Made by a program: the position numbers and the translations under genes. From IMG/VR virus record IMGVR_UViG_3300042465_005589, positions 62,001-126,000 of that record: 64,000 bases of DNA, one strand, 5' to 3'. Positions 31,603 to 63,470 of this stretch are shown here, in pieces; position 1 is the stretch's first letter, and each line of letters opens with the position of its first letter. The notes under the pieces are model-generated. The model was not told the origin of the DNA, made no database searches, and worked only from the letters and a program-made list of their open reading frames with translations.

Positions 31603-33219
31603 TTAATTAGACATTGCTTTATCTCTAATTTCATCATGAGCGTTATCTAACTTATCAGATAACCCATTTAATAATGGACATAATATTTTTGTGATATTAC
31701 TTTCAAGTTTATTTAAAAAGTCATTATCGTTTACATAATCAAAAATGTTGTCTCTTACCATATCGTATAGACCACCATTCAAATCAGCATCTTTTTTTAA
31801 TTTCCCAGCACTTCCATCAACAATTGATTTTGAAATTGTTTTTGTCAAATAACTACAATCAAGTAATTTTTCAATATCACTAACTTTAATATCATCAAGT
31901 GAATTAATTATTAATTTACTCATCCATCCATCAGAGTGTAATGGTGTTAATTTAGAAACTAACCATTCACCCATATATTCTTTAAATGTGTCAAAAATTG
32001 AATCGTAATCACCCTTGTCAAAAAACCCTTTTAACGTTTCAAAAAATTGTTCTTGGATAATATGTTTACTAAAATTTTGAGAATTTAAATAAATAGATTC
32101 TGTCAATATATCGTTAAACAATCTTTTTTGTTGAGGTTTGGTTTTTAAATATAAAGTCTCTACTATAATAGACGTTCTACCTTTAACAATTTTAGATTCC
32201 GCAGAATATGTTCTTAATTTTTCAGTTTTAACTTTTGTTAAATTTTCCTTAATTAAAGATTTAATTTTTAAATCAGTAGATTCGTTAAGACCAATAATGT
32301 ATGGACTAGGTGCTTTAAGATATTTGGTTTTACCCGCTAAAATTCTAAATACTTGTCTTTTATCAATTTTTTTATTTAAGAATCCGTAAGGAGACAATTT
32401 ACTCTTAACTTCAGCAGTTTCATCTTCTCTAAAACCATCAAAACTATCAAACTGTCCTGAACCATCACATTTAACTAATTGTTGTTTAAACTCTCTTAAT
32501 TGAGGGATTGGTGTTGTTTCAACTCTCGCATTATATTGTAATGCTGCTCCAAGATATTGACCTAATATTGTTCTACAACCTTCAGCATCTAATTTGATAC
32601 CTCCGGCAGCTCCCGCTTGTAAATCTTTAGTTTTACCTTTTGGTAAATAAAGAATTATGTTTTTCCAACCTTTATCTCTATCCAAAGCCGGTACTTGAGT
32701 AAATTGTGTTGTTAAAACATCGCTATCCGGTAACACTTTATCTTCAATATTGGTTAATAATTTAGCCTTTGGATAATCCTTAGATAACAATTCATTCCAT
32801 TGTTTAAAAATGTTTGACACAGCTTCTTTATCAACATAAGTTTGTAAGTTAGCTGTTACATTATCCAATGTTTTTAATAAAGTCACCTCATCCAATTTTG
32901 GGTCAATATTAAATGATGTTAATAAAGGACTTGTTGAATATGATAATGCGTCACATGCCCATTTTTTTTTATTTTTAGTCACCATATTCTGCACAGTCAT
33001 ATCAGCAAAGAATACAACATTCTCACCTTTACTATTTTGACCATACCAAATATCTTGATTATTTAATTTTCCTGGCTTACCATTCTTTAACCATTTAGGA
33101 AAACAACCCGATTTAAAGGCGTTTTGGAATAATAATTGTTCGTTAGTTTGAACTGGTCTAGCCTGTAATTGTTCTTTTATTGTATTTTTCATAATTGGTT
33201 GTTTTTTATACTTCTTCAT
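31603..33219 (-). CDS. Large hypothetical protein, possibly virion-associated
   Basis: 538-aa ORF in leader-bearing operon. Confidence 0.8.
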   Translation of the reverse strand: MKKYKKQPIMKNTIKEQLQARPVQTNEQLLFQNAFKSGCFPKWLKNGKPGKLNNQDIWYGQNSKGENVVFFADMTVQNMVTKNKKKWACDALSYSTSPLLTSFNIDPKLDEVTLLKTLDNVTANLQTYVDKEAVSNIFKQWNELLSKDYPKAKLLTNIEDKVLPDSDVLTTQFTQVPALDRDKGWKNIILYLPKGKTKDLQAGAAGGIKLDAEGCRTILGQYLGAALQYNARVETTPIPQLREFKQQLVKCDGSGQFDSFDGFREDETAEVKSKLSPYGFLNKKIDKRQVFRILAGKTKYLKAPSPYIIGLNESTDLKIKSLIKENLTKVKTEKLRTYSAESKIVKGRTSIIVETLYLKTKPQQKRLFNDILTESIYLNSQNFSKHIIQEQFFETLKGFFDKGDYDSIFDTFKEYMGEWLVSKLTPLHSDGWMSKLIINSLDDIKVSDIEKLLDCSYLTKTISKSIVDGSAGKLKKDADLNGGLYDMVRDNIFDYVNDNDFLNKLESNITKILCPLLNGLSDKLDNAHDEIRDKAMSN

Positions 33220-34009
33220 CGTCTGATATGGTACTTTGAATTTGTCCTTGTACCTGTGTATTAGAATCTGTTATTCCATCATTTTGTTGTTTAGGAGTTT
33301 CACCTCCTTGAACACCAGGTAATGTTTTAGGTAGATTTTGTGCGTCTTTAAGTTTTTGAGCAAAAAATTCTTTATATTTTTCAGCATTATCTGTCGGTGG
33401 AGTTGAGTTTTGTGGTGTTGTTGGTTCTACCGGTGTATCACCCTTCGGATTTTTATCAAACAACGCTTTTATAGAATCAATACCTTTTTGAGCTTTAGCT
33501 TCAACCCAATTTGGATATTTAGTTGCGAATTTACCACCCGACTTACCTTTAAAATAATATTTTCCGTTTTCTAATTTGTAATCATAAGATTTATCATTTT
33601 TAGTAATTAAAACCGATGTTGGTGGTGTCGTTCCTGCTGCCGGTGGCGTTGTTCCTGCTGCCGGTGGTGTAGTCCCTGATGCTGTAGTCCCTGCTGCTGT
33701 AGTTGTTCCTGCTGCCGGTGGTGTTGTTCCTGCTGATGTAGTCCCTGCTGCTGTAGTTGTTCCTGCTGCCGGTGGTGTTGTTCCTGCTACAGCCGCTTGT
33801 GCGTTTTTCAACATATCAGCCGGAGATGTTGGGGTATACTTAATACCAGCGTCTTGAGCCGAACCTGTATTAGATGTGAAATTAAATTTTTTATCACCAA
33901 CAGTTTGTTCAACAATGTTTTCAGATAAAGTCTTTTTAGGGTCGTAATTAAATAAAAGAGCCGCTTTTTGTAGCTCTTCAGAAATTAAATTATTTATATT
34001 ATTTTTCAT
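33206..34009 (-). CDS. Leader-bearing protein with (PP)AAGTT repeats
   Basis: LISEE..LSENIVEQ leader; T/P/A-rich linker. Confidence 0.8.
   Translation of the reverse strand: MKNNINNLISEELQKAALLFNYDPKKTLSENIVEQTVGDKKFNFTSNTGSAQDAGIKYTPTSPADMLKNAQAAVAGTTPPAAGTTTAAGTTSAGTTPPAAGTTTAAGTTASGTTPPAAGTTPPAAGTTPPTSVLITKNDKSYDYKLENGKYYFKGKSGGKFATKYPNWVEAKAQKGIDSIKALFDKNPKGDTPVEPTTPQNSTPPTDNAEKYKEFFAQKLKDAQNLPKTLPGVQGGETPKQQNDGITDSNTQVQGQIQSTISDDEEV
33620..33790 (-). repeat. Coding tandem repeats (AAGTT / PPAAGTT)
   Basis: Repeated GTTCCTGCTGC(CGGTGG) units of 15-21 bp. Confidence 0.9.
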
Positions 34010-34020
34010 ATATTTTTTTT

Positions 34021-35241
34021 TTAAAGTTCAATATCGTCACCCACATTAGGGTCTAAATCGTCTTGTTTTATTTGAGTAACTTTACTCCACCCTTTAGATG
34101 ATGTATATTGACCACCATCTTCGGTATTAATTACCATTTGATTACCATCACATTTCCAAGTCCCATTTAAAATAGTTCCATCTTCAAACTCATAGATAAA
34201 TTTTAAATTTTTATAAAAATTCAACGAATCTTTACCACTTGTTGATTTAAAAGATATTTTATTAGTTTGTGTTGTAGGTATATTCTTTCCAAAACCGTTA
34301 AAACAAGAATAATCATTTGTCCAAGTAGGTTTAGAAGATTCTGTTGTTGATGGTGCTGGTGGTGGAATCACCGGTGTTGATTGACCACATTCTTTTTTAG
34401 CATTAGGGAATCTTTTATCCAAGTCTCTAATTGCGTTAGGAAGATTTTTTAATGATTTCCAATCAGTAATTGATTTACCTTTTGTTTCCCATTCACAGTC
34501 ATTTGATAATCTATATTGATAAGGGTCTCCTGGTGTTGTATATATTTTTTTATCACTAGTTGATGTACTTGAGGATGATAATGAACCTAAATTACTTTTT
34601 CCGGTATTATCCCACCCAAATTGTTTGGTATATTCATAACCATCTTCTGTTTTTATATATAATTTACCTGAAACACATTTCCATTTTCCATTTAATATAG
34701 CTTTAACTTCATTTTCATAAACAAATTTTCCGTCTTTATAAAAATATAAATTATCTTCACCATCTTGAGTTTTAACAACAACTTTATCATCACTATCACT
34801 TCTATTAATATTACCTATCTCGTTAATGCAAGGGTTATCTTTTACCCAATCAGGTAAAGTTGTCATGTCTTCCCACCAATTAGATAAACGGTCTCTAATA
34901 TCACGATACCATACATTACCTTCTTTCCATACTTTTTTACCGGCATCTTTCAATTTCTCAAGAAGAGCTGCGTCCGTAACCTTTTCCCAAAATATTCTTT
35001 CAATATCAGAAACGTTTGGAATTGGGTCCGGAGTTGGAGGTGCAGGTGTCGGAGGTGCAGGTGTCGGTGGAGATGGCGTTGGAGGAGCTGGTGTTGGTGT
35101 TGTAATTTTAGGTTTATACCATTTACCATCACTACTAACATCATATTTAGACTTATCTATCTTACCAATTAAGGGTGGTGGAACTGCAGTCCAATCACCA
35201 CTATTGTCAGGTTGTTCTAATATAAGGGAATTTCTTTTCAT
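34021..35241 (-). CDS. Leader-bearing protein with Pro-rich repeats and a duplicated ~70-aa module
   Basis: PTPAPP repeats; two FYK..KF.YE..NG.WKC..TEDG..Y...GW modules. Confidence 0.8.
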   Translation of the reverse strand: MKRNSLILEQPDNSGDWTAVPPPLIGKIDKSKYDVSSDGKWYKPKITTPTPAPPTPSPPTPAPPTPAPPTPDPIPNVSDIERIFWEKVTDAALLEKLKDAGKKVWKEGNVWYRDIRDRLSNWWEDMTTLPDWVKDNPCINEIGNINRSDSDDKVVVKTQDGEDNLYFYKDGKFVYENEVKAILNGKWKCVSGKLYIKTEDGYEYTKQFGWDNTGKSNLGSLSSSSTSTSDKKIYTTPGDPYQYRLSNDCEWETKGKSITDWKSLKNLPNAIRDLDKRFPNAKKECGQSTPVIPPPAPSTTESSKPTWTNDYSCFNGFGKNIPTTQTNKISFKSTSGKDSLNFYKNLKFIYEFEDGTILNGTWKCDGNQMVINTEDGGQYTSSKGWSKVTQIKQDDLDPNVGDDIEL

Positions 35242-35264: not shown

Positions 35265-37160
35265 TTAATTACCTTTAGAGTAAGGAATAAATTTTTTACC
35301 ATCCTTATCCCAATACCAAGTATCAAATCCAGTACTAGAATCAATTTCATTTGTTTGAGCTGAAACTCCATCATATTCTTTTTTAACGGTAAAACCATAT
35401 TCTTTCATTTTAAGATTAAATAATCCTTTTAAACCAGCATCCGTTGTATCATCAATTACTTCTTCAGATTTCTTTTTCGCTTCTTCCGTTGTCTTTTCAA
35501 CCTCAACTTTAACATCGGTTTGCATACAATTAAAAATAATATTAATATTTTCTTCTCTTGATTTAGTTTTATCATAACATTTCAATTTAGATAACTCCTC
35601 ATCTGTTAATTTAGACAACGCCTCAATAAATTCTTTTTTACCTTTATTTAAAATACCTTCACCCGCTTTAACATCAAATTTAGAATTCATCCAATCATAA
35701 ATGTCTAAACCTAGTAAATGAGCCGGATTTAAATCTATTCTAGTTATTGGGAAGTCATCTGGAAAAGGTAAATGAACATCAAAATAAGTGTCAGTTTTTT
35801 TCCAATTATTATATCTTTCAACAAAATTTTTCCAATATAACTCAAAAATATTTTTAGTATCAGTGTCATTTCCATAACCAAAAATATTAAACCATTGAAA
35901 TAATGTTTGAAAAGTAAGGATGGTTGCGGGTAACCCTACGTGTGTAGCAACCCATAAATCTCGAACCAAGTCTTTTAATCCTGGTACTCCTCGTTTAAAA
36001 TATGACGCCCATTCATCAATACTTTTTGGTGCTCCCACAGTTAATAAACTAACCGTTCTTTCTAATAAAACTGGAATTTTATTTTTCATAAATTTAGGCA
36101 TTACTGAACTAGCCAAATCTTTTAACGCGTTTGCCGATGAAGTATTATCCAAAAAATAAGTAAGAGAACCCCATCTTCCTGATTCAAAAGGATTATGACT
36201 TTTAACTTGAGTTAAAACTTCACTAACTTCAGTACTATTATTAGGGTATCTCTTTTTTAAATATTTTTCCATTGTAGAATAAAAAGCCTCTTGTCCTGTT
36301 TTATATTTTTGAATTAGAACATCCATGTTAGTTCTAATATTACGAAACAAATTATCATCAATAGCCTCACCTCGTTTAAGTTGGTCAATTGATTGTGATA
36401 AAGCTTCATCAAATTTATTAAATAAATCTTGAGCAAATTTTTCATCACCTATTTTCCATAATCTAGCTTTATTCACATAATTATCTAATGCCGCACGAGT
36501 AAAGTCAATAAGAGTTTTATCACTAGATAATATATTTTCCCACCATTTAAGTGTTTTTGGAGATAAATCTTTTAATGATTCTCTATACAGAACTGAACTT
36601 ATTCCAATGCCTTCTTCACCTAAATCAGACACGACTTCGGTAACAAATTTATCTTGTTTAAGGTCTCTAATTTTTTGAGCAATTTTTTGAATTAAAACTT
36701 CATTTAAAAATACATCTTCTTCTCCATTAAGGTCTGTTAACACATCTCCGATTTTTTTATTACCTTTTGCTTGATTTGAGATAAATTCTATTAAACCTTT
36801 TTCACTTTTATTTGTTGATAACATAGCTTCACTCATTAATAGTTCGTAAATATCGTCAACAATACCTTGATTTTGACTAACTATTTGACCAAATATTTCT
36901 TTTTCTGCTTTACTTAAAGTATCATATAATGATGTGTTATCTAATACATCCATAATTTTTCTTAACACTCCTTTGTTAACTCTAATTGAATCAACCATTA
37001 CCTCATCAACGACATTATCAATTACCTTTTGACTTTTATTAAAAAAACTTTTTATTAAATCACTACCTATTTCAACATACTTATTTTCTTTTAATATTTT
37101 TGCATCAACACCCATAAGTTGTTGTTGACGATAAATCTCATATATAATTTTTTTATTCAT
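35265..37160 (-). CDS. Large helical protein with hydrophobic segment
   Basis: 631-aa ORF; QQLMG..ILKE leader. Confidence 0.8.
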   Translation of the reverse strand: MNKKIIYEIYRQQQLMGVDAKILKENKYVEIGSDLIKSFFNKSQKVIDNVVDEVMVDSIRVNKGVLRKIMDVLDNTSLYDTLSKAEKEIFGQIVSQNQGIVDDIYELLMSEAMLSTNKSEKGLIEFISNQAKGNKKIGDVLTDLNGEEDVFLNEVLIQKIAQKIRDLKQDKFVTEVVSDLGEEGIGISSVLYRESLKDLSPKTLKWWENILSSDKTLIDFTRAALDNYVNKARLWKIGDEKFAQDLFNKFDEALSQSIDQLKRGEAIDDNLFRNIRTNMDVLIQKYKTGQEAFYSTMEKYLKKRYPNNSTEVSEVLTQVKSHNPFESGRWGSLTYFLDNTSSANALKDLASSVMPKFMKNKIPVLLERTVSLLTVGAPKSIDEWASYFKRGVPGLKDLVRDLWVATHVGLPATILTFQTLFQWFNIFGYGNDTDTKNIFELYWKNFVERYNNWKKTDTYFDVHLPFPDDFPITRIDLNPAHLLGLDIYDWMNSKFDVKAGEGILNKGKKEFIEALSKLTDEELSKLKCYDKTKSREENINIIFNCMQTDVKVEVEKTTEEAKKKSEEVIDDTTDAGLKGLFNLKMKEYGFTVKKEYDGVSAQTNEIDSSTGFDTWYWDKDGKKFIPYSKGN

Positions 37161-37185
37161 AACTTATTATTTTAATATAAATACA

Positions 37186-38862
37186 TTATCTTTTAATCTT
37201 AAACCAATTAACCCCATTTACTTGAGTATAATCATAAACCGTATTTTCATTTTTTAATTCTGATTCAGGAATAAATCCTTCTTTTCTTAATTTTTTTTCA
37301 TCCTCAAGACTACCTTTTTTATTATCCACCGCTTTATTCTCATCCTCCGGTAATTCGGTATAAACACCTCCCGCTTCTTGAATACTATCTTTCATTACTG
37401 TGTTATAATATTTTCCCCAAGATTTTCCTTTTTTATTTAATTTTGTAAATGTTTCAATTTTTTTAACTGATTCGGTCTGTGGTAATTTTTTTAATACTTC
37501 CGCGTCATTAGACAATAAATTAAACGCCATTTCTTTTTGAAGTTCTTCAGGAATATTTATATAAACACCTTTTAATTTTTCTAAATCTTCTGAATTAAGA
37601 ACATCTCCCCACGCAGCATTTACCAAAATACCCAATAAAATAAAAAACGCATTTGTACTTAATTCTCTAGCCCAAAGTTTATTAAAAAAAGAAATACTTT
37701 TTAATAATTCAGGTTTAGATTTAACCATATTCTTAAGTTCTTTTATTATAATTTTAGGTAAATCATCCGAAACCGCAGTTTTCAATTCTTTTAATAATAA
37801 ATTTTTTGTTACTTCATCTTGAGTTAATAATTTTGACATAACTAATTGTTCAGATTCAGATAAACCATTATAAAATTTAACATAATCTTCAACATTACTT
37901 GATTTAGTCAATCCTGCTTTTGATAATTTTTCAGATAATTCAGTGAAAACCCCTTCAGGTATTCCTCTAAACATTTTTGAAAGTTTTAACATTGGTAAAG
38001 CCCCTGTAATAAATGATAATGCCGCTGAAACATTTTCACCTTTTTCAAGCTCTCTAAAACCAACCGCCGCACCTAAACCAGCTTCAAGTGCTATTTCCGC
38101 ATATAAAACCCATGCGGCACCACCCGTTAACATACCGGCAATTGCCGTTCCTAATGCAGCAGCTATTTGAATTGCAAAACCATAGTCGTCAACAAACCTT
38201 TGATAATCACTACGTTTATCAACCCATTCAGGTGGAGTATAAGGTTCTTTTGTTTTTAAATTTCTATAATAACCAAATCTCCAAAGATTAGTTCCTTCTG
38301 TTTTAATTACATAACCAATATAAACTTCATCACCAATGGAGAATTGCCTTACAGAACCTATCGGAAATACTTTACTAAGATTACTAATTAATAGTTTTTT
38401 ATCTTCTTTAGGGTGTTTTTTAACAAATTTATTAACAGTGTCACTAATTCCTTCTATATCCCAAAAATAAATTTTACTATCTTCCGGTATTGGGACACTA
38501 TTAATGTCACCCATTTTTTGATTTGAAGGTGAAGGGTAATAACAAAACCTTTTTCCGGTTTCTTTGTCGACAAGAATAGCGTCTTCACCTTCAACCCCTT
38601 CAGGATTTTTAGGGATTCCTAATGCTTTATCGGGATATTTACACCAATTAGGGTATTTTTTAGATTTTTCTTCAGCACTTCGTTGTAAAATTTGTTGTTC
38701 CCCTCTTGCTAATATTTCTTTTGTTTGAGGATTTTCAAATCTACTATCAGGTTGTTCAAATATATATTGAGTATTTTCATTTAAAGTTTTGGACATATCA
38801 TACCCCATCAATAGTTTAACTCTATTAACAAGTAATTCACCCTCATTTAATTTATTGTCCAT
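37186..38862 (-). CDS. Large protein with Gly/Ala-rich TM segments
   Basis: 558-aa ORF; LLMGY..TLNE..IFEQ leader. Confidence 0.8.
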   Translation of the reverse strand: MDNKLNEGELLVNRVKLLMGYDMSKTLNENTQYIFEQPDSRFENPQTKEILARGEQQILQRSAEEKSKKYPNWCKYPDKALGIPKNPEGVEGEDAILVDKETGKRFCYYPSPSNQKMGDINSVPIPEDSKIYFWDIEGISDTVNKFVKKHPKEDKKLLISNLSKVFPIGSVRQFSIGDEVYIGYVIKTEGTNLWRFGYYRNLKTKEPYTPPEWVDKRSDYQRFVDDYGFAIQIAAALGTAIAGMLTGGAAWVLYAEIALEAGLGAAVGFRELEKGENVSAALSFITGALPMLKLSKMFRGIPEGVFTELSEKLSKAGLTKSSNVEDYVKFYNGLSESEQLVMSKLLTQDEVTKNLLLKELKTAVSDDLPKIIIKELKNMVKSKPELLKSISFFNKLWARELSTNAFFILLGILVNAAWGDVLNSEDLEKLKGVYINIPEELQKEMAFNLLSNDAEVLKKLPQTESVKKIETFTKLNKKGKSWGKYYNTVMKDSIQEAGGVYTELPEDENKAVDNKKGSLEDEKKLRKEGFIPESELKNENTVYDYTQVNGVNWFKIKR

Positions 38863-38931
38863 AAAATGTTTTTTTATAAATAGTTTGGTTTATAAAAAAA
38901 TAAAAATTATCTTTGACCAAAATATAAGGAT

Positions 38932-40078: not shown

Positions 40079-40390
40079 TTAAAATAATTGAGTGTCTGGT
40101 AATTTTTTTGGATAGATTAAATAATATTCATTTAAAAAAGATATAATCTCATCTTCATCTAAAAAATCTTCATCAAAATCATCGTATACCTCATCAAACT
40201 CATCATCGTCTTCATCAAAAAAACTTTCATCAATTTTATTTGAGATATTATATCCAAATGTTTCTATCTCATCAAGTATTATTTGGTCTGTTCTTATTTC
40301 ATCTTCATTATCACTTAAGATTCTGAATGTCACATCTAAAGTATGAGATGTTTCATTTATGTAATAAGACACTAATTCTTTAATTTCCAT
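40079..40390 (-). CDS. Acidic hypothetical protein
   Basis: 103-aa D/E-rich ORF. Confidence 0.75.
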   Translation of the reverse strand: MEIKELVSYYINETSHTLDVTFRILSDNEDEIRTDQIILDEIETFGYNISNKIDESFFDEDDDEFDEVYDDFDEDFLDEDEIISFLNEYYLIYPKKLPDTQLF

Positions 40391-40452: not shown

Positions 40453-41013
40453 TTAGTTATATTTTTTAAATCTTTTGAACATATCTAAAGATTCATTAAT
40501 TTTATCTAAAATGTTCTCTTTTTCCTCTTCCTCAATTTCATTTTCTTCATCGCCTAAATCCATTAAATCATCAAGATTCATTTCAAAATCATCATCTTCA
40601 TACATTTCAAATTCATCGTCAAAATCAACAGTACCATTAGTTAAGTCATCTTCACCATCACCAATCATATCAAGTTGTTCTTCAACTTCTTCAAAACTTT
40701 CGTCCGGAACAAATTGTGAACCTGGTGAAATATATTCAACAACTTCATTATAATCTTCTTCTTCATCGGAAAATAAACCAGTACTTTTATTATCATGTTT
40801 CATCTCATTGATGTTCATGTTTCTATAAGTTGTTACCTCACCTTTATTATTAACTGTAAGACCTTCTTTATCGTTAGCGAAGTCTTGTACATATAATGGT
40901 TGTTCGTTTGATGGTTGGATATAACTTGTTAAGTATCCATCATAAACTTCCTTATGTTGGTCAAGGATGTTATTTTTTTCCTCGTTTGTCATTTTAAAAA
41001 AATATGCGTTCAT
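40453..41013 (-). CDS. Acidic hypothetical protein (scaffold-like composition)
   Basis: 186-aa D/E-rich ORF. Confidence 0.75.
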   Translation of the reverse strand: MNAYFFKMTNEEKNNILDQHKEVYDGYLTSYIQPSNEQPLYVQDFANDKEGLTVNNKGEVTTYRNMNINEMKHDNKSTGLFSDEEEDYNEVVEYISPGSQFVPDESFEEVEEQLDMIGDGEDDLTNGTVDFDDEFEMYEDDDFEMNLDDLMDLGDEENEIEEEEKENILDKINESLDMFKRFKKYN

Positions 41014-42812: not shown

Positions 42813-43594
42813 TCTCCCGAAATAAAATCACATAATTTACTTGAAAATGTTGATTGATTTATATAATTAAAATCGTCAACCTCAATATCACCAATATTTC
42901 TAAGATATGTGTAAGTATGTGTCCATATCTCACAATCTTCTAAATTCATATATTTGGTAATTTCACCCCAAACAATACCATCTAACGGGACTCTAAGGTT
43001 ATCGTCTTCACTCATATACCCAACAATAGTTTCCGCAAGGTCTTGAGTTATGTTTTCTAAAGGTTCATTATCAACTAACACTTGATTACAATAAACTGAA
43101 ATATCAGTTGTTATTCCATCATCTATATAGACATCAGAAACTTCATAACTAACATTCAAGGTTAATGTTTTTCTTTCACCACCACAAAAAAAGTTAAGTC
43201 CTGTTTGTTTTGAACCTAATCGGTCTATGTCTTTAGTAATTTTTTCATTAAACCATTTAGGGATATACCCACCATATTTACCAATTTTCTCCCCATCATA
43301 ATAAATGTCATTAACTTTAGTAAAAACATTCGACCAATTAAGACCAACCATTTCACATCCATCTTGTACGATGTGTTTTGATTTACAATTAAAAAAATCC
43401 CACAAATAAGGGATATCTGATTGTTTTGGTGTAATTTCTAAATCATATTGGATTTCAGGGTAAGATTCACCACCTCTAGTTGTTTTATCAACTTCAATAT
43501 TAACAAATCTAAATCTAAATGCGTCCACAGTGTGTGTTAATTTAGTTAGATATGATATAAGACCTTTTATTTCACCACTATTGACCATTGACAA
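42809..43594 (-). CDS. Hypothetical protein
   Basis: 261-aa ORF. Confidence 0.75.
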   Translation of the reverse strand: MSMVNSGEIKGLISYLTKLTHTVDAFRFRFVNIEVDKTTRGGESYPEIQYDLEITPKQSDIPYLWDFFNCKSKHIVQDGCEMVGLNWSNVFTKVNDIYYDGEKIGKYGGYIPKWFNEKITKDIDRLGSKQTGLNFFCGGERKTLTLNVSYEVSDVYIDDGITTDISVYCNQVLVDNEPLENITQDLAETIVGYMSEDDNLRVPLDGIVWGEITKYMNLEDCEIWTHTYTYLRNIGDIEVDDFNYINQSTFSSKLCDFISGD

Positions 43595-44549
43595 TGATTT
43601 GAATTACTTTTTCCATTTCATCTTCAGTCAATTTATGGATATCTTTATGTGTTTCATACCAATCTCTAACAACATCATTAAATGGTAATTTTCTTAACTT
43701 GGCAACTCTTCTAAAACCAACTCTTTGAGCTGTTATTTCATGTGGTTGAGTGTAATATTTAAATGGTTCTTCTGGTTCTTTTTTACGTTTACGTTCTCCT
43801 TTAAAATATTGGAAACCATGTTCCAATTCATGAGCCATAATATCGTTTAATTCACCTATTATATTATAAAAATTTCTTTTTAATGTTTTTGGATTAAAAA
43901 TTATTAAAACCTCAATTACATCTTCATCCGGAACAAAAGTTCCTGTCATTTTATACCCCTCTAATTTATTGTTAATTTTGATTGTTAAATCAATTGAAAA
44001 TCCAAAAGGGAGATTTGTGAATGAGTAATTACGACCATCTTCAGGGTTTGGTAACATAAAACTACCGCGTTTTCCATTTTTTAAAACATTCACAATATCT
44101 TTTACTGTTGTTCTAACGGCTAATCTACTCATTCTTGATTCTGTTATGTTTTCAGGTTTTTTCACGTCAAATGTTAAACTATCAATTGTTGTTCTAATAT
44201 TACTATCAAAGATACTTAAAAAATTGGTCATCTCCAAATTTAAATTTGAATAGAATTTGTATAATCTATTTTCAAAACTTCTAGCAATCATTTTACCTTG
44301 TTCATTGTCTTCAGGTGTAAATAATAATCGACTTAAATTATCATTAAGACCTATAATAACAACATTTAATAAGGCGTAATCATATTCCTCACCAACGCTA
44401 GTCATTTTTCTATAACCATCAATTTTGAATTTATAATCAATATCCGAAATCATTGATTCCGGTAAATCATTAATTATTTGACCTTTAAACTTAAATGTCC
44501 GGGTTGATAATAGTTCATTAATTCTATTTAGTTGTTTTTCTGTTAACAT
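43578..44549 (-). CDS. Protein with C-terminal HExxH zincin-like domain
   Basis: AHELEHGFQ..PHEITA. Confidence 0.7.
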   Translation of the reverse strand: MLTEKQLNRINELLSTRTFKFKGQIINDLPESMISDIDYKFKIDGYRKMTSVGEEYDYALLNVVIIGLNDNLSRLLFTPEDNEQGKMIARSFENRLYKFYSNLNLEMTNFLSIFDSNIRTTIDSLTFDVKKPENITESRMSRLAVRTTVKDIVNVLKNGKRGSFMLPNPEDGRNYSFTNLPFGFSIDLTIKINNKLEGYKMTGTFVPDEDVIEVLIIFNPKTLKRNFYNIIGELNDIMAHELEHGFQYFKGERKRKKEPEEPFKYYTQPHEITAQRVGFRRVAKLRKLPFNDVVRDWYETHKDIHKLTEDEMEKVIQIIVNGQ

Positions 44550-44809: not shown

Positions 44810-45322
44810 ATGAAAAAAATACAAATAAACGAGACCGAACTTCGCAAATCAGTTAGAAAACATTTGTTGGAACAATCTGAATCCGGAGCGAAAGATAATA
44901 GAGAAGAAAAACAAAGATGTGTTTCTGGAAACATAATGCCATTAGATGAACTTGTTGGTCCTTCCGACAATTTTAGTGATTATACATCAGGTGTTTTAAA
45001 ACGTGATGGTGGTATTAACGGAATGGTTGACACATTAGATATGTTAAGAACATTACGTTTACATTCAAACATTAAAGATAATGGTGAACATTTGTCATAT
45101 AATTTAATGAATCACCTAAATAAATTTAGAAATAAAAATTTTCACGACGAAACAAACAATGGATGTTTAAAAGCGATGGATAAAGTAATTGAACTTTATA
45201 AAGAAAATGAACACGGTGAAGATTTAGTTAAAGACATTGAAAAAGTGTTAGCTCACAAAGACCCATCTCCAAGAGCAAAAGAATATCTGAAAAGATGTTT
45301 GGTTTTAGTTAAGGAGAAATAA
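44810..45322 (+). CDS. Leader-bearing hypothetical protein
   Basis: IQINETELR..LLEQ. Confidence 0.75.
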   Translation: MKKIQINETELRKSVRKHLLEQSESGAKDNREEKQRCVSGNIMPLDELVGPSDNFSDYTSGVLKRDGGINGMVDTLDMLRTLRLHSNIKDNGEHLSYNLMNHLNKFRNKNFHDETNNGCLKAMDKVIELYKENEHGEDLVKDIEKVLAHKDPSPRAKEYLKRCLVLVKEK

Positions 45323-53145: not shown

Positions 53146-54306
53146 TCACCATTTATAATTACTTTCCTCACCGTGCATAGTCACAAAGTCAGACAATGTA
53201 AGGTTTAATTTTGGAAATTTTTTATTAATCATATTAATAAATAATTCATTACTTATTTTACCCATACCAGGATAGTAATTAATATTATTTGGTCTAAAAA
53301 TTTTTCCTAATGACCCAAATATTATTATAAGGTCATTTTCTAATCCAATTAAAAATTTTTTATTATACTCATCAATATTTGATATAAACCATTTACGTCC
53401 TTTCTCTAATTTATCATCTAATGTTATGTTATTAACAATATCAGTTAAAACATATTTAATACCTTTTATTGTATTTTTTTCATCATCTGTTATCTCTAAA
53501 CCTAATTTTTCTTTATAATAAATTGGTATTAACTTTTCACTTAACCCTTTTTTTAGTAAAAATTTAGTTAAATTAATAAATAATTCACTTTCACTAATGT
53601 CGTCATCATTTTTATCCATAAATTGAGTAGAATCATAATGAAATTGGTAAGGAGATTTTGGGTCTCCTAAATTATAAAAAACATAATAGGATGAACCTGG
53701 TGAGTTTTTAAGATATTCTTTAAAACTATCAAATCCCGCCATAGTGCAAATTGATACTATCTGCCCTTTATCTCTACCCGAACATTTACCAAGAATCTCC
53801 CGATACACATTCCAAGCTTCTTTACTATCCTTCACTTCCGGTGGAACTTGAAAAGATTGTAATCCATCGACCATCCCCAAATATTTAATACCAACAGACT
53901 CTAATTTTTGAATATCGTTTGTGCTAACTAAGTTTTTTTTATCAGAAATATCACCTTGTTCATTATCTTGTTGTTTTATTAAAATATCTTTTGACTTTCT
54001 TTCAAACTTATCAACATCTTGTAATGTTTTAATTTGACCTAAATCTTTAATAGGGTAGTGTTGTTTAAATTTTTCAAAAATATTAAAGTAATTTTTAAAT
54101 TTATAAGCGTCCTCATATTTTATGAAACCGGAACTTAACATTTTTAACAACCATCCGACATAAAATGGTTTTTTTATATTATTAAGAATTTCATTAAACT
54201 GATTTTCAGGGATTAACTCTGAATCAACATATTTAACCCTTAACTCATCTTCTGAGTATTGCTCGGTAAGTATTCTATACTGCGTTTCTGTAATTATTAG
54301 TTTCAT
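53146..54306 (-). CDS. Leader-bearing hypothetical protein
   Basis: MKLIITETQ; YQFHYDSTQFMD. Confidence 0.78.
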   Translation of the reverse strand: MKLIITETQYRILTEQYSEDELRVKYVDSELIPENQFNEILNNIKKPFYVGWLLKMLSSGFIKYEDAYKFKNYFNIFEKFKQHYPIKDLGQIKTLQDVDKFERKSKDILIKQQDNEQGDISDKKNLVSTNDIQKLESVGIKYLGMVDGLQSFQVPPEVKDSKEAWNVYREILGKCSGRDKGQIVSICTMAGFDSFKEYLKNSPGSSYYVFYNLGDPKSPYQFHYDSTQFMDKNDDDISESELFINLTKFLLKKGLSEKLIPIYYKEKLGLEITDDEKNTIKGIKYVLTDIVNNITLDDKLEKGRKWFISNIDEYNKKFLIGLENDLIIIFGSLGKIFRPNNINYYPGMGKISNELFINMINKKFPKLNLTLSDFVTMHGEESNYKW

Positions 54307-54542
54307 ATTTTATCAACCTTAGCTTTAAATTTAACGCCATTTGTTCTTAATATATAAACTAATCTATGATATTGAATTGAGTCCGTCAATGTTATTGAAA
54401 ATGGCTCTATTACCTCAATATTAAAAACTTCTTTTTGTTGTTTGGTTCCCGTAATACCTTTTAACGCATTTAAGTTATCCTCATCCCAAAAGATACCCTC
54501 TTTAATTTTTTTCATCTGAGATTCTGTAATTATTAATTTCAT
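54303..54542 (-). CDS. Small leader-bearing protein
   Basis: MKLIITESQ. Confidence 0.72.
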   Translation of the reverse strand: MKLIITESQMKKIKEGIFWDEDNLNALKGITGTKQQKEVFNIEVIEPFSITLTDSIQYHRLVYILRTNGVKFKAKVDKI

Positions 54543-55325: not shown

Positions 55326-55631
55326 TTATCTAAATCTACGTGGTAATCTATCCTCATATTCATTATCTTCACTATCAAAGTCATCCATTTCATCTTCATC
55401 ATCAAGACCTAATTTACTTAAGTCAAAATCACTAAAATCATCATCCTCAATATCGTCCGGATTAGTTTCATCAACATCATCGTATTTATAACCTTTATCC
55501 AAATCTTCAGTATCACCATAAAAATATTCATCTATTTCTGGTTGTTCTTGTTCTGAAATAACTCTACCCGCCTTATACCCTAAAAGGTACTTCATATTGG
55601 CAATATCTTCGTTAATTAATTTCTTATCCAT
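55326..55631 (-). CDS. Acidic leader-bearing protein
   Basis: LINE..LLGY..VISEQ. Confidence 0.72.
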   Translation of the reverse strand: MDKKLINEDIANMKYLLGYKAGRVISEQEQPEIDEYFYGDTEDLDKGYKYDDVDETNPDDIEDDDFSDFDLSKLGLDDEDEMDDFDSEDNEYEDRLPRRFR

Positions 55632-55660
55632 TTTAATTGTTTTTTATTATAAATATACCA

Positions 55661-56458
55661 TTATTTTAATAAGTTATAATATTCTTTGAAGTGTTTGAGT
55701 CTATCAGGTAATCCAATAGTTCCCCCGTTTACTCTTTTAGTTACCTCAGTTACTGTGGTATCATCCGCCCCTTTATCACAAATAGACCATAGTTTATTTG
55801 AGTCAAAGAAGAATGCCGCTGACGCCAATGGATATTTTGTAGCGACCAAATCAGGGTTTGTGATAGTATCTTCTCCGATGAATTTTGCGAAGTTTTTATA
55901 GTTGTCTTTACCAGTTAATTGAATATATCCACGTCCTCTAAATTTGAAACCCTCTTTTGTTGATTCATCCCCATTACCCATTCTACCACCATATACTTTT
56001 GACGCAATTTTTTCAGGGTTTCTTGCGTAAGATTCTGATAAGTTACCAGGAAAGTATTTTGGGAATATCTTTTTAAGACCATCCGCAGAATAGTTAACAT
56101 TTTCGGAAACCAATTTAAATCCTCCTGATTCGTGACCACATTGGGATAAGAAGTGAGCCAATCTTAATGGTGTTGTAATATTGAATTTTTTTGCCGTATC
56201 CGGAATCTGAGCAATTACTGAATCAGGGACATGACCTTTTAAATTTTCTAATTTAAAGATTCCTTTAATAACTTCACCCAAAAACATTTTTTCCCATGTC
56301 TCATCACCAATAACCCCATCTGACGTTAATCCATTTTTAGTTTGCCATTCTTTAACTAATTTTTCGGTACCAACACCAAAATCACCATCAACCACAGTAC
56401 CTAATTTTGTTTGTAGTTTTTTCACATCTTCCCCTTTTGACCCAACTTTCAATAACAT
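55661..56458 (-). CDS. Endolysin: peptidoglycan-binding domain plus GH19 muramidase
   Basis: LKVGSKGEDVKKLQ..DGDFG; HESGGF, FRGRGYIQLTGKDNY, VNGG. Confidence 0.93.
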   Translation of the reverse strand: MLLKVGSKGEDVKKLQTKLGTVVDGDFGVGTEKLVKEWQTKNGLTSDGVIGDETWEKMFLGEVIKGIFKLENLKGHVPDSVIAQIPDTAKKFNITTPLRLAHFLSQCGHESGGFKLVSENVNYSADGLKKIFPKYFPGNLSESYARNPEKIASKVYGGRMGNGDESTKEGFKFRGRGYIQLTGKDNYKNFAKFIGEDTITNPDLVATKYPLASAAFFFDSNKLWSICDKGADDTTVTEVTKRVNGGTIGLPDRLKHFKEYYNLLK

Positions 56459-57011: not shown

Positions 57012-57824
57012 CTACTTATTTAATAAATCCCAAGCTCTTGCCAATCTTGTTAAACCAATACCAGCACCAAATCTTGGAAAGAAGTCCAAAGATAAGAATT
57101 CTTCCAATTCTTTTTCCACTCTATCTTTTCCAAATAACTCAAATAACTTGGAAGAATACCCACCACCTTCGATTGAGTAGAACATCTCTCTCATTTTAAC
57201 AACATCACAACTTCTCTCAGCAGAACCAATAGTTTCTTGACCAAAAAGGATTACGTCAACCTTATTGAAGATGTTGTCTGAATCGTGTTTCATATTCCAA
57301 AATGGGTTTGTTCTAATTGGAAAGTTTTGTAATGATATAACCTCACTTTTTTCTTTCCACATTCTTGATTCGTGTTCATCTTCTAAAATAGAAACATCTC
57401 CATATTCTTTACAAACTTGTTCGTAATCTACGGGAACTGGTTCTGAGAAACCTAAATATTGTAATAATTCACGTTCTAATACAAGTAAATGAAGCATACC
57501 ACCCTTTGATTCAAATTCAAACATTGGAAAGATTAACTCGTGACGACCCGGAATTGGATTTTTCTCTTCTCTATATGATGTTGAAATACAGAACACTCCA
57601 TCCCACTCAGGATTCTTCAATAATTCCAATTCTAACCACATTTGTCCTGTTTGTGGTAATGGCCAAATTTCACCCCCATATTCAAAGGTTTTTACTGAAT
57701 GTGGGTTTTCACAAGCAGCTAAAATAGATAATCTTGATTGAGTTGGGACCTCAATAAAATTCTTACTAACGAAGAATGTTCTTAATTTTTGTACCAGTTC
57801 GTGGTAAGTTTTTGTGTTTTTCAT
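57012..57824 (-). CDS. Class II aaRS-like catalytic domain lacking anticodon domain (AsnRS2/archaeal-type asparagine synthetase-like)
   Basis: LPQTGQ, STSYREE..RH..FPMFEFE, ETIGSAER, GAGIGLTRL. Confidence 0.82.
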   Translation of the reverse strand: MKNTKTYHELVQKLRTFFVSKNFIEVPTQSRLSILAACENPHSVKTFEYGGEIWPLPQTGQMWLELELLKNPEWDGVFCISTSYREEKNPIPGRHELIFPMFEFESKGGMLHLLVLERELLQYLGFSEPVPVDYEQVCKEYGDVSILEDEHESRMWKEKSEVISLQNFPIRTNPFWNMKHDSDNIFNKVDVILFGQETIGSAERSCDVVKMREMFYSIEGGGYSSKLFELFGKDRVEKELEEFLSLDFFPRFGAGIGLTRLARAWDLLNK

Positions 57825-61987: not shown

Positions 61988-62413
61988 ATGAAAAAAATTC
62001 AAACAGGTGATACAGTAAAAGTACACTACACAGGGAAATTAGAAGATGGGTCTATTTTTGATACGTCATTAGCTGAAGGTCGTGAGCCGATTGAAGTAAC
62101 TTTAGGTCAGGGACAATTAATTCCGGGATTTGAAGCTGGGTTAATTGACATGAGTGAAGGTGAGAAAAAAACAGTTGAGATTGAATCTGCGGACGCTTAT
62201 GGTGACCCAAGACCTGAAATGATTAATGAAGTACCTAAAGCTAATGTTCCTGAAGGAGTACAATCTGGAGAAATGTTACAAGGTATGGGACCACAAGGAC
62301 CAGTTAATGTAAAGGTGGTATCTGTAACTGAAGAAACTGTTACATTAGATGCTAATCACCCATTAGCAGGTAAAAAATTAATTTTTGATTTAGAAATTGT
62401 TAGTATCTCTTAA
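61988..62413 (+). CDS. FKBP-type peptidyl-prolyl isomerase (SlyD/SlpA-like, no His-rich tail)
   Basis: VKVHYTGKLEDG..FD, LIPGFE, DANHPLAGKKL. Confidence 0.93.
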   Translation: MKKIQTGDTVKVHYTGKLEDGSIFDTSLAEGREPIEVTLGQGQLIPGFEAGLIDMSEGEKKTVEIESADAYGDPRPEMINEVPKANVPEGVQSGEMLQGMGPQGPVNVKVVSVTEETVTLDANHPLAGKKLIFDLEIVSIS

Positions 62414-62438: not shown

Positions 62439-62828
62439 TTAATCATACATTTTATCAGCATCTTTCGGGTGCGATTTTTCGTATTTTTTAATTATTGAAC
62501 CGGACTTTGCGTTAGCCTCATCTTCATTTTTACCACCAATATCACCACCTCTATCTCTATTGAGAATTGTTCGTTGATATTCATGAATCCACTCATGAGT
62601 TAATGTTCTTAAAATATCGCGATTCATTCTCCCTTTAGATAAGACGAATATTTCACTATTGTCATTTCTAAGACCTGTAGTCATATTTGTGTCTCTCTTA
62701 CCTACAAAAATAATGGTTAAGTCTCTTTTCAAGGGGCATTCTGTTTGCAAGTAACTAATGAAATTATTAAAAAATTTAAAATTATCTTTAGGTATATCAG
62801 AATTAATATGTTTAATTGTAATTTTCAT
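62439..62828 (-). CDS. HExxH zincin-like protein
   Basis: LTHEWIHEYQ..EDEAN. Confidence 0.68.
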   Translation of the reverse strand: MKITIKHINSDIPKDNFKFFNNFISYLQTECPLKRDLTIIFVGKRDTNMTTGLRNDNSEIFVLSKGRMNRDILRTLTHEWIHEYQRTILNRDRGGDIGGKNEDEANAKSGSIIKKYEKSHPKDADKMYD

Positions 62829-62879
62829 ATTTTATAAATATATCACAATTGCTAAGTATTTATATATAAAAGATTAAAC

Positions 62880-63470
62880 ATGTCAAAAAAATTAATAATA
62901 ACTGAAGAAGAAAAAGATGAAATAAAATCTTTACACAATATTAATGAACAAATTGGGTTTGAGGAAATTATTAACTATGTTAAAAATTTATTAAATAATA
63001 TGGGTAAGGGAACTGAGTCTAAACCAAACACCAATATTGTTACAAGTAATATAACATCTGATGATGACATTTATAAGGGTATTTTAGAATGTATCGGGGC
63101 TAAACCAACAAAAAATAATATGTTATTTATGTATGCTTGGAGACAAGCCGAAGGAGGTGGGTCATCAAACAACCCCTTTAATACCACTCAAAAATGGGCA
63201 AATGCAACAATTCTTAAAAATAGTTCTGCTGGTGTTAAAAACTATAAAACACCTGAAGATGGAATACAAGCAACTTGTAAAACATTAAAAAATGGTAGGT
63301 ACCAAAGTATTATAGACGGGTTTAAAAATGATGTGGGACTATCCAAATTAACAGATGCTGTTGTAAATTCGCCTTGGGGTACTAAGGATTTATTACGTAC
63401 AGTAACTCAAGGATATATCGCTGGTAATACACCAAAACCAAAACCAATTAATAGAACTGAAATCGTTTAA
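62880..63470 (+). CDS. Leader-bearing lysozyme-like (putative muramidase/glucosaminidase) protein
   Basis: WRQAEGG..NNPFNT..GVKNY..GIQAT. Confidence 0.62.
   Translation: MSKKLIITEEEKDEIKSLHNINEQIGFEEIINYVKNLLNNMGKGTESKPNTNIVTSNITSDDDIYKGILECIGAKPTKNNMLFMYAWRQAEGGGSSNNPFNTTQKWANATILKNSSAGVKNYKTPEDGIQATCKTLKNGRYQSIIDGFKNDVGLSKLTDAVVNSPWGTKDLLRTVTQGYIAGNTPKPKPINRTEIV

What the first reader, a model, noticed from the sequence alone, without database searches (positions are those of the whole stretch)
31603..63470. Shared N-terminal (I/L)-x-E leader on at least 14 unrelated proteins: candidate capsid-loading signal
Seen: leaders such as MKLIITESQYKKLINE, MSKKLIITEEEKDEIKSLHNINEQ, LISEE..LSENIVEQ, LLMGY..TLNE..IFEQ, IQINETE..LLEQ and ILEMH..IISEQ at 33206, 34021, 35265, 37186, 41028, 42183, 43578, 44810, 45751, 53141, 54306, 54542, 55631 and 62880. 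Cargo domains include peptidases, a muramidase-like domain and TM proteins. Known: T4 gp21 and phiKZ gp175 cleave head-protein propeptides after Glu, and T4 internal proteins use an N-terminal capsid-targeting sequence. Inference: a modular system for packaging effectors that are injected with the DNA.
Basis: partly seen in the sequence, partly recalled or inferred. Interest (0 to 1): 0.75.

Follow-up and report, generated by a model that had tools for sequence, protein, structure and literature searches.

The report
Shared N-terminal leader on phage proteins
A 318-kb T4-like freshwater phage puts the same short N-terminal tag, built around the cutting motif of its own head-maturation protease, on dozens of unrelated proteins, most likely to load them into the capsid and deliver them to the host; no experiment has tested this.

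Summary
Sixteen window genes, 13 of them clear cases, start with a conserved non-hydrophobic leader. It comes in three intergrading forms: A (MK-LIITE-SQY..L), B (K.LLGY…) and C (EEKNRIL.MH…). Most forms end in hydrophobic-x-Glu-Gln. The cargo parts show no similarity to one another. The leader occurs only at N-termini, and selection acts on the peptide, not the DNA. In related uncultured phages it sits on more than 100 unrelated cargo families. A profile of form C alone finds 1,841 protein clusters. The window belongs to a bS21-encoding T4-like jumbo phage. Its head module lies 12-30 kb to the left and encodes a T4 gp21-family prohead protease. The major capsid protein, scaffold and protease of this clade carry the same hydrophobic-x-Glu motif at the expected maturation sites. 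T4 Alt, a packaged and injected protein, starts MELITE. Leader genes also sit inside the head module, and orthologues swap leader forms. The cargo domains that can be named are mostly cell-wall binding or lytic. Best reading: a T4-style capsid-targeting propeptide system, greatly expanded (confidence about 0.6). Neither cleavage nor packaging has been demonstrated.

The parts
33206..34009 (-). 267-aa protein. Form-B leader at 33905-34009 (35 aa, ends NIVEQ), then a Pro/Thr/Ala-rich linker.
34021..35241 (-). 406-aa protein. Minimal leader at 35212-35241 (MKRNSLILEQ), followed by PD and a Pro/Thr-rich linker.
35265..37160 (-). 631-aa protein. Form-A/B leader at 37083-37160 (KKIIYE…QQLMGV…ILKEN). 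TATTTATA lies upstream at 37176-37183.
37186..38862 (-). 558-aa protein. Form-B leader at 38752-38862 (37 aa, KLLMGYD…YIFEQ then PD). Two TM-like segments in the cargo.
40453..40992 (-). 179-aa very acidic protein. Form-C leader at 40900-40992 (EEKNNILDQH…SNEQ).
   Evidence: C profile 23 bits
41028..41516 (-). 162-aa protein. Form-C leader at 41427-41516 (…DEKNRILEMH…IISEQ), then a Pro/Thr linker.
   Evidence: C profile 53 bits
42183..42812 (+). 209-aa protein. Form-A leader at 42183-42239 (…LIINESQKKMILKES). One TM-like segment in the cargo.
43578..44549 (-). 323-aa conserved HExxH protein. Only a weak, truncated A-like start at 44505-44549 (MLTEKQLNRINELL). Doubtful member.
44810..45322 (+). 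170-aa protein. Long form-A leader at 44810-44875 (…IQINETELRK…HLLEQ).
   Evidence: orthologue in L005
45751..46104 (-). 117-aa protein. Form-A leader at 46063-46104 (MKITVTEEQFNKL).
   Evidence: 18.6 bits
52683..53141 (-). 152-aa protein. Form-A leader at 53094-53141 (MKLIITESQYKKLINE). Cargo has an HExxH motif and a weak metallo-protease PHROG hit.
53146..54306 (-). 386-aa protein. Form-A leader at 54259-54306 (MKLIITETQYRILTEQ).
54303..54542 (-). 79-aa protein. Form-A leader at 54495-54542 (MKLIITESQMKKIKEG).
55326..55631 (-). 101-aa very acidic protein. Form-A/B leader at 55548-55631 (…KLINED…KYLLGY…RVISEQ). The cargo differs in the relatives L003 and L005.
62880..63470 (+). 196-aa protein. 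Form-A/C leader at 62880-62951 (24 aa, ends NINEQ), a hypervariable linker, then a GH73-like peptidoglycan hydrolase domain (residues ~57-185).
31603..33192 (-). 529-aa protein (538 aa from the upstream ATG). Possible minimal leader MKNTIKEQ at 33169-33192. Weak candidate.
55661..56458 (-). Endolysin without a leader (PG_binding_1 + GH19). Serves as an internal negative control.

Best explanation
The leader is a capsid-targeting propeptide of the T4 type. It is a short N-terminal peptide made of an extended hydrophobic stretch, an amphipathic helix, and one or more sites of the form hydrophobic-hydrophobic-(T/S/N)-Glu followed by Ser or Gln.

Inferred steps:
1. The leader docks a newly made protein onto the scaffolding core while the prohead assembles.
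2. The phage's gp21-family protease (Peptidase_S77) then cuts after the Glu and frees the cargo inside the head.
3. The cargo leaves with the DNA at infection.

The three leader forms (A, B, C) would be interchangeable versions of one address. The tagged set includes cell-wall-binding and cell-wall-lytic proteins, membrane-inserting proteins, very acidic proteins and many orphans. It would therefore be a large, fast-evolving arsenal of ejected proteins.

Shown by computation: the leader, its N-terminal specificity, its modularity, the protease family, and the shared motif in the canonical protease substrates.

Inferred only: docking, cleavage, packaging and ejection.
For: 1. The leader is a selected peptide module.
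- 84 distinct MK[LF]IITE starts on ORFs of at least 50 aa were found in IMG/VR. Positions that the search pattern did not force are still conserved: S8 49%, Q9 68%, L/I/V13 88%.
- Of 214 HMM hits, 199 start with Met and 201 lie close to the preceding stop codon.
- 219 of 2,483 ORF starts match, against 1 interior control.
- Codon choice inside the leader matches background usage.

2. It is modular.
- 205 leader proteins fall into 108 cargo clusters.
- The form-C profile finds 1,841 cluster representatives at E <= 1e-3. In about 142 of the best 150, the match starts at residues 1-3 of the protein.
- In the 62880 family the leader is conserved, the 25-50-aa linker is hypervariable, and the domain is conserved.
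- AF2 predicts an unpacked helix at residues 9-18 and a disordered linker.
- Orthologues at E 1e-94 to 1e-104 carry form A-long in this genome and form C in L176, L184 and L185.

3. The protease is present.
- The same genome has TerL, portal, bS21, Peptidase_S77, scaffold and Gp23-type MCP 12-30 kb left of the window.
- The protease is 36% identical to T4 gp21 (E 5e-23), with ELNHP and SSRGxGS conserved.

4. The same motif is found in the canonical substrates.
- The MCP has x-L-I-N-E|A in 69 of 71 relatives. It lines up with T4 gp23 F-L-T-E65|A.
- The scaffold has KESL[STN]EQ before its acidic region.
- The protease has GIL.E18 and hydrophobic-hydrophobic-x-E37 followed by S/A/Q/N.
- T4 gp21 has LIE-9 (PMC9026906).

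5. T4 precedents.
- ipII and ipIII start MKTYQEFIAE|A, ipI has …STITE|A, and Alt starts MELITE.
- Alt loses a propeptide of about 7 residues through gp21, and the CTS loads diverse proteins into the head (PMC9026906, PMC3012670).

6. Genomic context.
- Leader genes lie directly downstream of the MCP gene in this genome and in relatives.
- TATTTAT precedes scaffold (50/52), protease (40/43) and portal (20/26) genes. It precedes 48% of leader genes against 27% of other genes.

7. Cargo.
- Pfam hits among 121 leader proteins are mostly cell-wall domains: PG_binding_1, Peptidase_M23, LysM, Hydrolase_2, Phage_lysozyme, Phage_lysozyme2, GH19 and OmpA.
- The lysis endolysin has no leader.
- Exported phage proteins in the same genome use classical signal peptides.

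8. A cultured relative.
- Flavobacterium phage immuto shares syntenic genes with the window.
- Its genome is annotated with a prohead core serine protease.
- It has two proteins that share a 23-aa leader ending LAGIITE|S and then diverge.
Against: - There are no proteomic or biochemical data, so packaging and cleavage are untested.
- At least 29 of 234 ORFs seen in this genome are tagged. That is far more than the handful of CTS proteins in T4.
- In form A, conservation runs on past Glu7 (S-Q-Y..L). A cut at Glu7 alone would leave the docking helix on the cargo.
- About 28% of form-A leaders have no second hydrophobic-x-Glu within 40 residues.
- The leader has no sequence homology to the T4 IP CTS beyond M-K and I-T-E.
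- The promoter-like motif also precedes many genes without a leader.
- Cell-wall-acting cargo has to reach the periplasm. T7 shows this route for capsid-internal proteins, but T4-like phages do not.
- A protease-leader complex prediction gave no verdict.
Confidence: 0.6

Rival explanations
1. The leader is a handle for the phage's own proteostasis machinery: DnaK, a ClpB/ClpA-like AAA+ protein, ClpP and FKBP. It would recruit a chaperone for folding, or mark proteins for timed degradation as an N-terminal degron.
For: - The genome encodes DnaK inside the window, and ClpB-like, ClpP and SmpB genes in the flanks.
- A leader-gene array abuts dnaK in the window and in L003 and L005.
- ClpP lies beside leader genes.
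- The T4 gp23 N-terminus is reported to direct proteins to GroEL (cited in PMC10052503).
- The start Met-Lys-hydrophobic x3 resembles known Hsp70 and ClpX binding preferences (my own knowledge, not tested here).
Against: - The invariant Glu with a hydrophobic residue two positions before it is not a feature of those signals. It is the gp21 motif, and it recurs in the MCP, scaffold and protease.
- In immuto the IITE motif sits at residues 20-23, not at the extreme N-terminus, and no DnaK is annotated in that genome.
- Leader genes occur in many contexts away from dnaK, including next to the MCP gene.
Confidence: 0.12
2. The leader is a non-classical sorting signal that sends proteins to the host cell envelope or periplasm during infection, independent of the virion.
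For: - The cargo domains that can be named are mostly peptidoglycan-binding or lytic.
- Some cargos have TM-like segments.
Against: - The leader has no hydrophobic core, no twin-arginine motif and no lipobox.
- The same genome uses ordinary Sec/lipoprotein signals on other proteins.
- Most cargo families have no envelope-related domain.
- The motif matches the protease sites in head proteins.
Confidence: 0.1
3. The leader has no address function. It is a shared structural element, such as an oligomerisation helix, or a conserved 5' gene end kept by recombination that shuffles cassettes in hyperplastic regions.
For: - Leader genes form tandem arrays whose content differs between phages that are 85% identical.
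- In some small families the helix after Glu7 continues into a conserved ..KYLD..F segment that looks like part of the fold.
- In the 323-aa family the N-terminal helix is modelled with fair confidence and no linker follows it.
Against: - Synonymous sites are free to vary, so conservation does not act on the DNA.
- The leader is separated from conserved domains by hypervariable linkers, and AF2 does not pack it against the domain.
- Orthologous cargos carry different leader forms.
- The strict N-terminal position and the invariant Glu are left unexplained.
Confidence: 0.08

Closest known systems
T4 capsid targeting sequence (CTS) of internal proteins IPI/IPII/IPIII, and the N-propeptide of Alt, removed by gp21
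   Same: - A short N-terminal peptide sits on otherwise unrelated, fast-evolving proteins.
- It ends in Ile/Leu-x-Glu.
- A gp21-family protease is encoded in the same genome.
- Alt starts MELITE and IPI ends …ITE, against MK-LIITE here.
- The genes lie near the tRNA cluster and the lysozyme gene in both phages.
   Different: - There is no sequence homology to MKTYQEFIAE.
- There are three leader forms of up to 37 residues, often with two or three candidate sites and a characteristic Glu-Gln end.
- Dozens of tagged genes occur per genome, against about four in T4.
- Many cargos are cell-wall-active.
- The system is untested experimentally.
Propeptides of phiKZ / 201phi2-1 / SPN3US head and ejection proteins, cut by gp175/gp245
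   Same: - These are jumbo phages with many head proteins and a gp21-related protease that cuts after Glu.
- Propeptides carry multiple redundant sites.
- Ser is preferred at P1' in SPN3US (PMC10052503).
   Different: - P3 there is Ala/Ser/Gly; here it is Ile/Leu/Val, as in T4.
- Most propeptides there are long (111-254 aa) and not shared between proteins.
- This phage is T4-like (Gp23-type MCP, bS21 clade), not phiKZ-like.
T7 internal core protein gp16 and other virion-associated peptidoglycan hydrolases
   Same: A peptidoglycan-degrading domain is carried in the particle and used at entry, separate from the lysis endolysin.
   Different: - Those proteins have no shared, removable N-terminal address.
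- Here lytic and binding domains of several families carry the common leader.
MuF-domain polymorphic toxins of temperate phages
   Same: A conserved N-terminal part is thought to bring variable C-terminal effectors into the head.
   Different: - MuF is a folded domain of several hundred residues.
- No MuF domain was found in any leader protein scanned here.

Membership tests
T4-type capsid-targeting propeptide processed by a gp21-family prohead protease | A gp21-family (Peptidase_S77/U9) protease is encoded by the same phage. | tested here: met
   L298:9258-9983 hits PF03420. It is 36% identical to T4 gp21 (E 5e-23), with ELNHP and SSRGxGS conserved.
T4-type capsid-targeting propeptide processed by a gp21-family prohead protease | The propeptide ends in hydrophobic-x-Glu, the protease's cleavage motif. 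| tested here: met
   Glu is at position 7 in 99% of 207 form-A leaders, and a hydrophobic residue two positions before it in 97%. Forms B and C end in hydrophobic-x-E-Q. The same motif occurs in the MCP, scaffold and protease.
T4-type capsid-targeting propeptide processed by a gp21-family prohead protease | The leader is strictly N-terminal and shared by otherwise unrelated proteins. | tested here: met
T4-type capsid-targeting propeptide processed by a gp21-family prohead protease | Sequence homology to the T4 IP CTS (MKTYQEFIAE). | tested here: not met
   By eye, only M-K and the I-T-E of IPI and Alt are shared. This is an analogue or a very distant relative, not a recognisable homologue.
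T4-type capsid-targeting propeptide processed by a gp21-family prohead protease | The protein is present in proheads or virions, and the leader is removed in vivo. | not testable with these tools
   No proteome exists for these phages. A protease-leader complex prediction gave no verdict.
phiKZ-type head propeptides | Cleavage motif with a small residue (S/A/G) at P3. | tested here: not met
   P3 is Ile/Leu/Val in the leaders and in the MCP site. The MCP is Gp23-type.
Sec / Tat / lipoprotein signal peptides | A hydrophobic core of 10-20 residues, a twin-arginine motif or a lipobox Cys. | tested here: not met
   No TM-like stretch occurs in any leader. The leaders are charged and amphipathic. 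Classical signals exist on other proteins of the same genome.
MuF polymorphic-toxin packaging domain | A MuF/Phage_Mu_F domain at the N-terminus. | tested here: not met
   No such Pfam hit in 20 window proteins or in 121 leader proteins.
bS21-encoding T4-like jumbo phages of Bacteroidota (Chen et al. 2022) | bS21 lies on the opposite strand inside a TerL-portal-protease-MCP block. Genome about 290-330 kb, 31-34% GC, many tRNAs. | tested here: met
   L298 gene order. Contig of 318,164 bp. Window GC 0.27-0.36. 23 tRNAs. Description in PMC9723584.

The most novel reading that the evidence does not exclude
The three leader forms are a phage-encoded protein-sorting code that is not tied to head maturation. 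For example, the leader could be recognised by the phage's own DnaK/ClpB/ClpP set, or it could drive an unknown route that takes cell-wall-acting proteins to the envelope. Its likeness to gp21 sites would then be coincidental or secondary.
Probability: 0.15. Interest if true: 0.85.

Novelty: new variant of a known kind. Interest (0 to 1): 0.7.

Why it matters
If the leader is a capsid address, then the proteins a phage injects could be read directly from sequence. This would hold for a very abundant group of uncultured freshwater phages of Bacteroidota: more than 100 cargo families for form A in the loci sampled, and 1,841 protein clusters for form C alone.

That would turn hundreds of orphan genes into candidate entry enzymes, anti-defence proteins and host-takeover proteins. 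It would also show that the T4 CTS principle has been scaled up to dozens of cargos per virion in jumbo phages.

It would supply natural, portable tags for packaging foreign proteins into phage heads, as is done with T4.

A cultured relative, Flavobacterium phage immuto, carries the leader on two proteins, so the idea can be tested directly.

I found none of the leader strings in the searchable literature.

Tried and rejected
- Searches of the INPHARED phage collection found nothing. I tried megablast with 20 kb of window DNA and tblastn with the 386-aa and 558-aa leader proteins.
- Pfam on 20 window proteins named no family for any leader; the only hits were in cargo or leaderless proteins. 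PHROGs on 10 of them gave one weak hit, also in a cargo.
- Fishing for the window phage's own head module with MCP queries from L057 and from immuto failed. Each query returned about 600 contigs, and the window's contig was not among the best 80.
- I then walked along the genome by exact-protein look-ups. The right flank (126-150 kb and 170-191 kb of the contig) held no head genes. The left flank did.
- One look-up failed because I had called the ORF start wrongly.
I resent it without those rows. The result was no verdict (score 0.00), which is no evidence either way.
- Foldseek against the PDB gave no significant match for the 62880 model. The exhaustive VIA search gave the GH73 matches.
- The AF2 model of the 323-aa HExxH protein was poor (pLDDT 61, pTM 0.36). 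Its structural matches were generic, so 'peptidase' stays unsupported for that protein.
- The ESM Atlas search for the 386-aa protein returned only unnamed viral clusters.
- I rejected chance and AT-rich composition as explanations.
- I rejected DNA-level conservation as an explanation.
- I rejected a classical signal peptide as an explanation.


Full report
**What the window is.** The window matches positions about 62,004-126,003 of IMG/VR contig IMGVR_UViG_3300042465_005589 (318,164 bp) at 100% identity. Its GC content is 27-36%. It holds 23 tRNA genes at 3-26 kb, and most genes are small and lie on the minus strand. Nothing in the INPHARED phage collection is close at the DNA level, and neither of two leader proteins finds a match there. 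A relative at about 85% protein identity exists as a 322-kb contig (L003).

**Checking the observation.** The quoted N-termini are all present.
- The four-residue motif [ILVMF]-x-E-Q occurs 19 times in 17,010 residues of window ORFs, and 12 of those fall in the first 45 residues.
- In 31.6-64 kb, 11 of 52 proteins carry it there, against 2.5% of interior windows.
- The 16 cargo regions show no BLASTP similarity to one another.

Reading the leaders side by side shows three intergrading forms:
- Form A: M-(x)-K-hydrophobic x3-(T/N/S)-E-(S/E)-Q-(Y/F)-x-x-(L/I).
- Form B: a helix with K-x-L-(L/M)-G-Y.
- Form C: (S/T)-x-(D/E)-E-K-x-R-I-L-x-(M/L)-H.

Forms B and C, and the long version of A, end in hydrophobic-x-E-Q. 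A polar or Pro/Thr-rich stretch follows.

**The leader is a widespread, selected, N-terminal peptide.**
It gave 84 distinct starts on ORFs of at least 50 aa. They lie in contigs of about 30% GC and 4-322 kb in length.
- Positions that the pattern did not force are still conserved: S8 49%, Q9 68%, aromatic or Leu at 10, L/I/V at 13 in 88%.
- Of 214 profile hits in stop-to-stop translations, 199 begin with Met and 201 lie just after a stop codon.
- An iterated profile hits 219 of 2,483 unique ORF starts, against 1 interior control.
- Codon choice at synonymous leader positions mirrors background usage, so selection acts on the peptide.
- The 205 leader proteins fall into 108 cargo clusters.
- A 36-position profile of form C finds 1,841 cluster representatives (E <= 1e-3) among 1.84 billion proteins. 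In about 142 of the best 150, the match starts at residues 1-3. Protein lengths range from 36 to 472 aa.
- Sources name these proteins only 'hypothetical' or 'OmpA-like'.
- In the roughly 150 kb of this genome that I could read, 29 of 234 ORFs pass the leader criteria. These include further arrays just right of the window.

**Architecture.**
- In the family of 62880-63470 (231 homologues), the 24-residue leader is nearly as conserved as the C-terminal domain.
- The two are separated by a 25-50-residue linker that is hypervariable and rich in indels. Conservation stops exactly at …N-E-Q.
- AF2 predicts an extended start, a helix at residues 9-18 that does not pack on the domain, a disordered linker, and a folded domain.
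- The five best structural matches of that domain are GH73-type peptidoglycan hydrolases: FlgJ Z 7.8, AtlA 7.7, and others down to 5.8. A weak Pfam Glucosaminidase hit agrees with this.

**Which phage, and does it have the right protease?**
- Loci carrying the leader often encode T4 gp18-like sheaths (E 1e-27 to 1e-70).
- L057 and L060 show a T4-like head block with ribosomal protein bS21 on the opposite strand. That arrangement is described for freshwater jumbo phages of Bacteroidota of 293-331 kb (PMC9723584).
- Walking left from the window by exact-protein look-ups found the window phage's own head block 12-30 kb away. Its order is TerL, portal, bS21 (opposite strand), Peptidase_S77, DUF4494, an acidic 516-aa scaffold, and a Gp23-type MCP.
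- The protease is 36% identical to T4 gp21 (E 5e-23), with ELNHP and SSRGxGS conserved.
- The window also shares syntenic genes at E 1e-39 to 1e-180 with the cultured Flavobacterium phage vB_FspM_immuto. That genome is annotated with a prohead core serine protease.

**The leader motif is the motif of the protease's canonical substrates.**
- The MCP N-terminus reads …S-F-L-I-N-E|A-T-S. It lines up with T4 gp23 …S-F-L-T-E65|A. The motif x-L-I-N-E-A is present in 69 of 71 related MCPs.
- The scaffold has K-E-S-L-(S/T/N)-E-Q just before its acidic region in 26 of 52 relatives, including this genome.
- The protease itself has an invariant G-I-L-x-E18, and hydrophobic-hydrophobic-x-E37 followed by S, A, Q or N just before the catalytic domain. 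T4 gp21 has a comparable L-I-E9 (PMC9026906).
- From the T4 record, ipII and ipIII start MKTYQEFIAE|A, ipI has …S-T-I-T-E|A, and Alt starts M-E-L-I-T-E.
- The review states that Alt loses an N-propeptide of about 7 residues through gp21, and that the CTS lets T4-like phages load varied proteins into the head (PMC9026906; PMC3012670).

**Context.**
- In this genome the gene right after the MCP gene is a 393-aa form-C leader protein, and a 165-aa long form-A protein follows about 3 kb further on.
- In relatives, two to four leader genes follow the MCP gene.
- One of them, an OmpA-like protein, has an orthologue (E 1e-94 to 1e-104) left of the window that carries a form-A leader instead of form C. 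The leader forms are therefore interchangeable on one cargo.
- The leader-gene array beside dnaK differs in gene content between the window, L003 and L005. This recalls the variable IP repertoires of T-even phages.
- A promoter-like TATTTAT(A) lies upstream of scaffold (50/52), protease (40/43) and portal (20/26) genes. It is essentially never found upstream of MCP (0/69) or TerL (1/20).
- The same motif lies upstream of 48% of leader genes, against 27% of other genes.

**Cargo.**
- Among 121 leader proteins, the Pfam domains found are mostly cell-wall related: PG_binding_1, Peptidase_M23, LysM, Hydrolase_2, Phage_lysozyme, Phage_lysozyme2, GH19 and OmpA.
- Examples include M23 + GH19 and PG_binding + M23 on single chains, and a PG_binding protein just right of the window.
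- The window's lysis endolysin (55661-56458) has no leader.
- Other proteins of the genome carry ordinary signal peptides.
- Two window cargos have TM-like segments, and three leader or neighbouring proteins are extremely acidic.

**Interpretation.** The simplest account is a T4-style capsid-targeting propeptide system, much expanded. What is shown is the leader, its modularity, the protease family and the shared motif. Docking to the core, cleavage, packaging and ejection are inferred.

Weak points:
- no proteomics;
- the unusually large number of tagged genes;
- conservation that extends beyond Glu7 in form A;
- cargos that must act in the periplasm;
- a complex prediction that gave no verdict.

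Rival explanations are a chaperone or degron handle for the phage's DnaK/Clp set, a non-classical envelope-sorting signal, and a mere structural or recombinational element. Each explains less. In particular, none explains the invariant Glu with a hydrophobic P3, or its recurrence in the MCP, scaffold and protease.

**Novelty.** The principle has been known from T4 since the 1990s. This leader family, its three forms, its scale and its cargo spectrum are not described in the searchable literature. I file it as a new variant of a known kind.

Noticed in passing
window 37176-37183, 38875-38882, 41533-41540, 44553-44560, 44783-44790, 55648-55655, 62857-62864 and others; L298 upstream of 10378: A promoter-like motif TATTTAT(A) lies 5-30 nt upstream of many start codons. 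It is nearly universal before scaffold, protease and portal genes of the clade, and absent before MCP and TerL. It is the reverse complement of the T4 late promoter TATAAATA. It is probably the late promoter of these phages.
   Followed up: partly
window 3121-25996: An array of 23 tRNA genes, all on the minus strand, some unusually long (91-94 nt). It is interleaved with GIY-YIG-like ORFs (9235-9975, 17274-17918) and two paralogous Cys-rich 206-aa ORFs (1133-1753, 4732-5352).
   Followed up: no
window 485-922, 50682-52550, 61988-62413; flanks L128:13555-15603 and L126:1273-2007: The phage carries a proteostasis and translation-rescue kit: SmpB, DnaK, FKBP, a ClpB/ClpA-like double AAA+ protein and ClpP. 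It also encodes ribosomal protein bS21 in the head module (L298:8477-8671).
   Followed up: partly
window 54591-55289 (+): A Tad6-like protein (Pfam PF25188, type I Thoeris inhibitor, E 3e-14) sits between leader genes. It has no leader itself.
   Followed up: no
window 40079-40390, 40453-40992, 55326-55631: Three very acidic small proteins, with 34-45% Asp+Glu in the two that carry leaders. They could be DNA mimics or core peptides like T4 gp67/gp68.
   Followed up: no
L211:11675-12139 and L212:25061-25456 (Flavobacterium phage immuto gp083 and gp230): Two proteins of a cultured phage share a 23-residue leader ending LAGIITE|S and then diverge completely. This gives a culturable system for testing the leader.
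   Followed up: partly
L128:17041-18060 versus L176:9796-10860, L184:2969-4042, L185:2803-3870: Orthologous OmpA-like proteins carry different leader forms, and the gene has moved away from the MCP gene in the window phage. The adjacent 127-aa secreted-protein gene on the opposite strand moved with it.
   Followed up: yes
window 26930-31503: A block of glycosyltransferase-like genes lies between the tRNA array and the first leader genes. I did not run families on it. Immuto has a comparable block at 49-60 kb.
   Followed up: no
window 79-459, 7886-8911, 57012-57824: A SET-domain protein, a T4 Rnl1-like RNA ligase and a 270-aa class-II aminoacyl-tRNA-synthetase-like (tRNA-synt_2) protein, according to precomputed Pfam hits.
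   Followed up: no
A6 alignment (form-C leaders): Form C has an invariant Ile-Leu-x-x-His with near-invariant Glu and Arg before it. A conserved His in a targeting peptide is unexplained.
   Followed up: no
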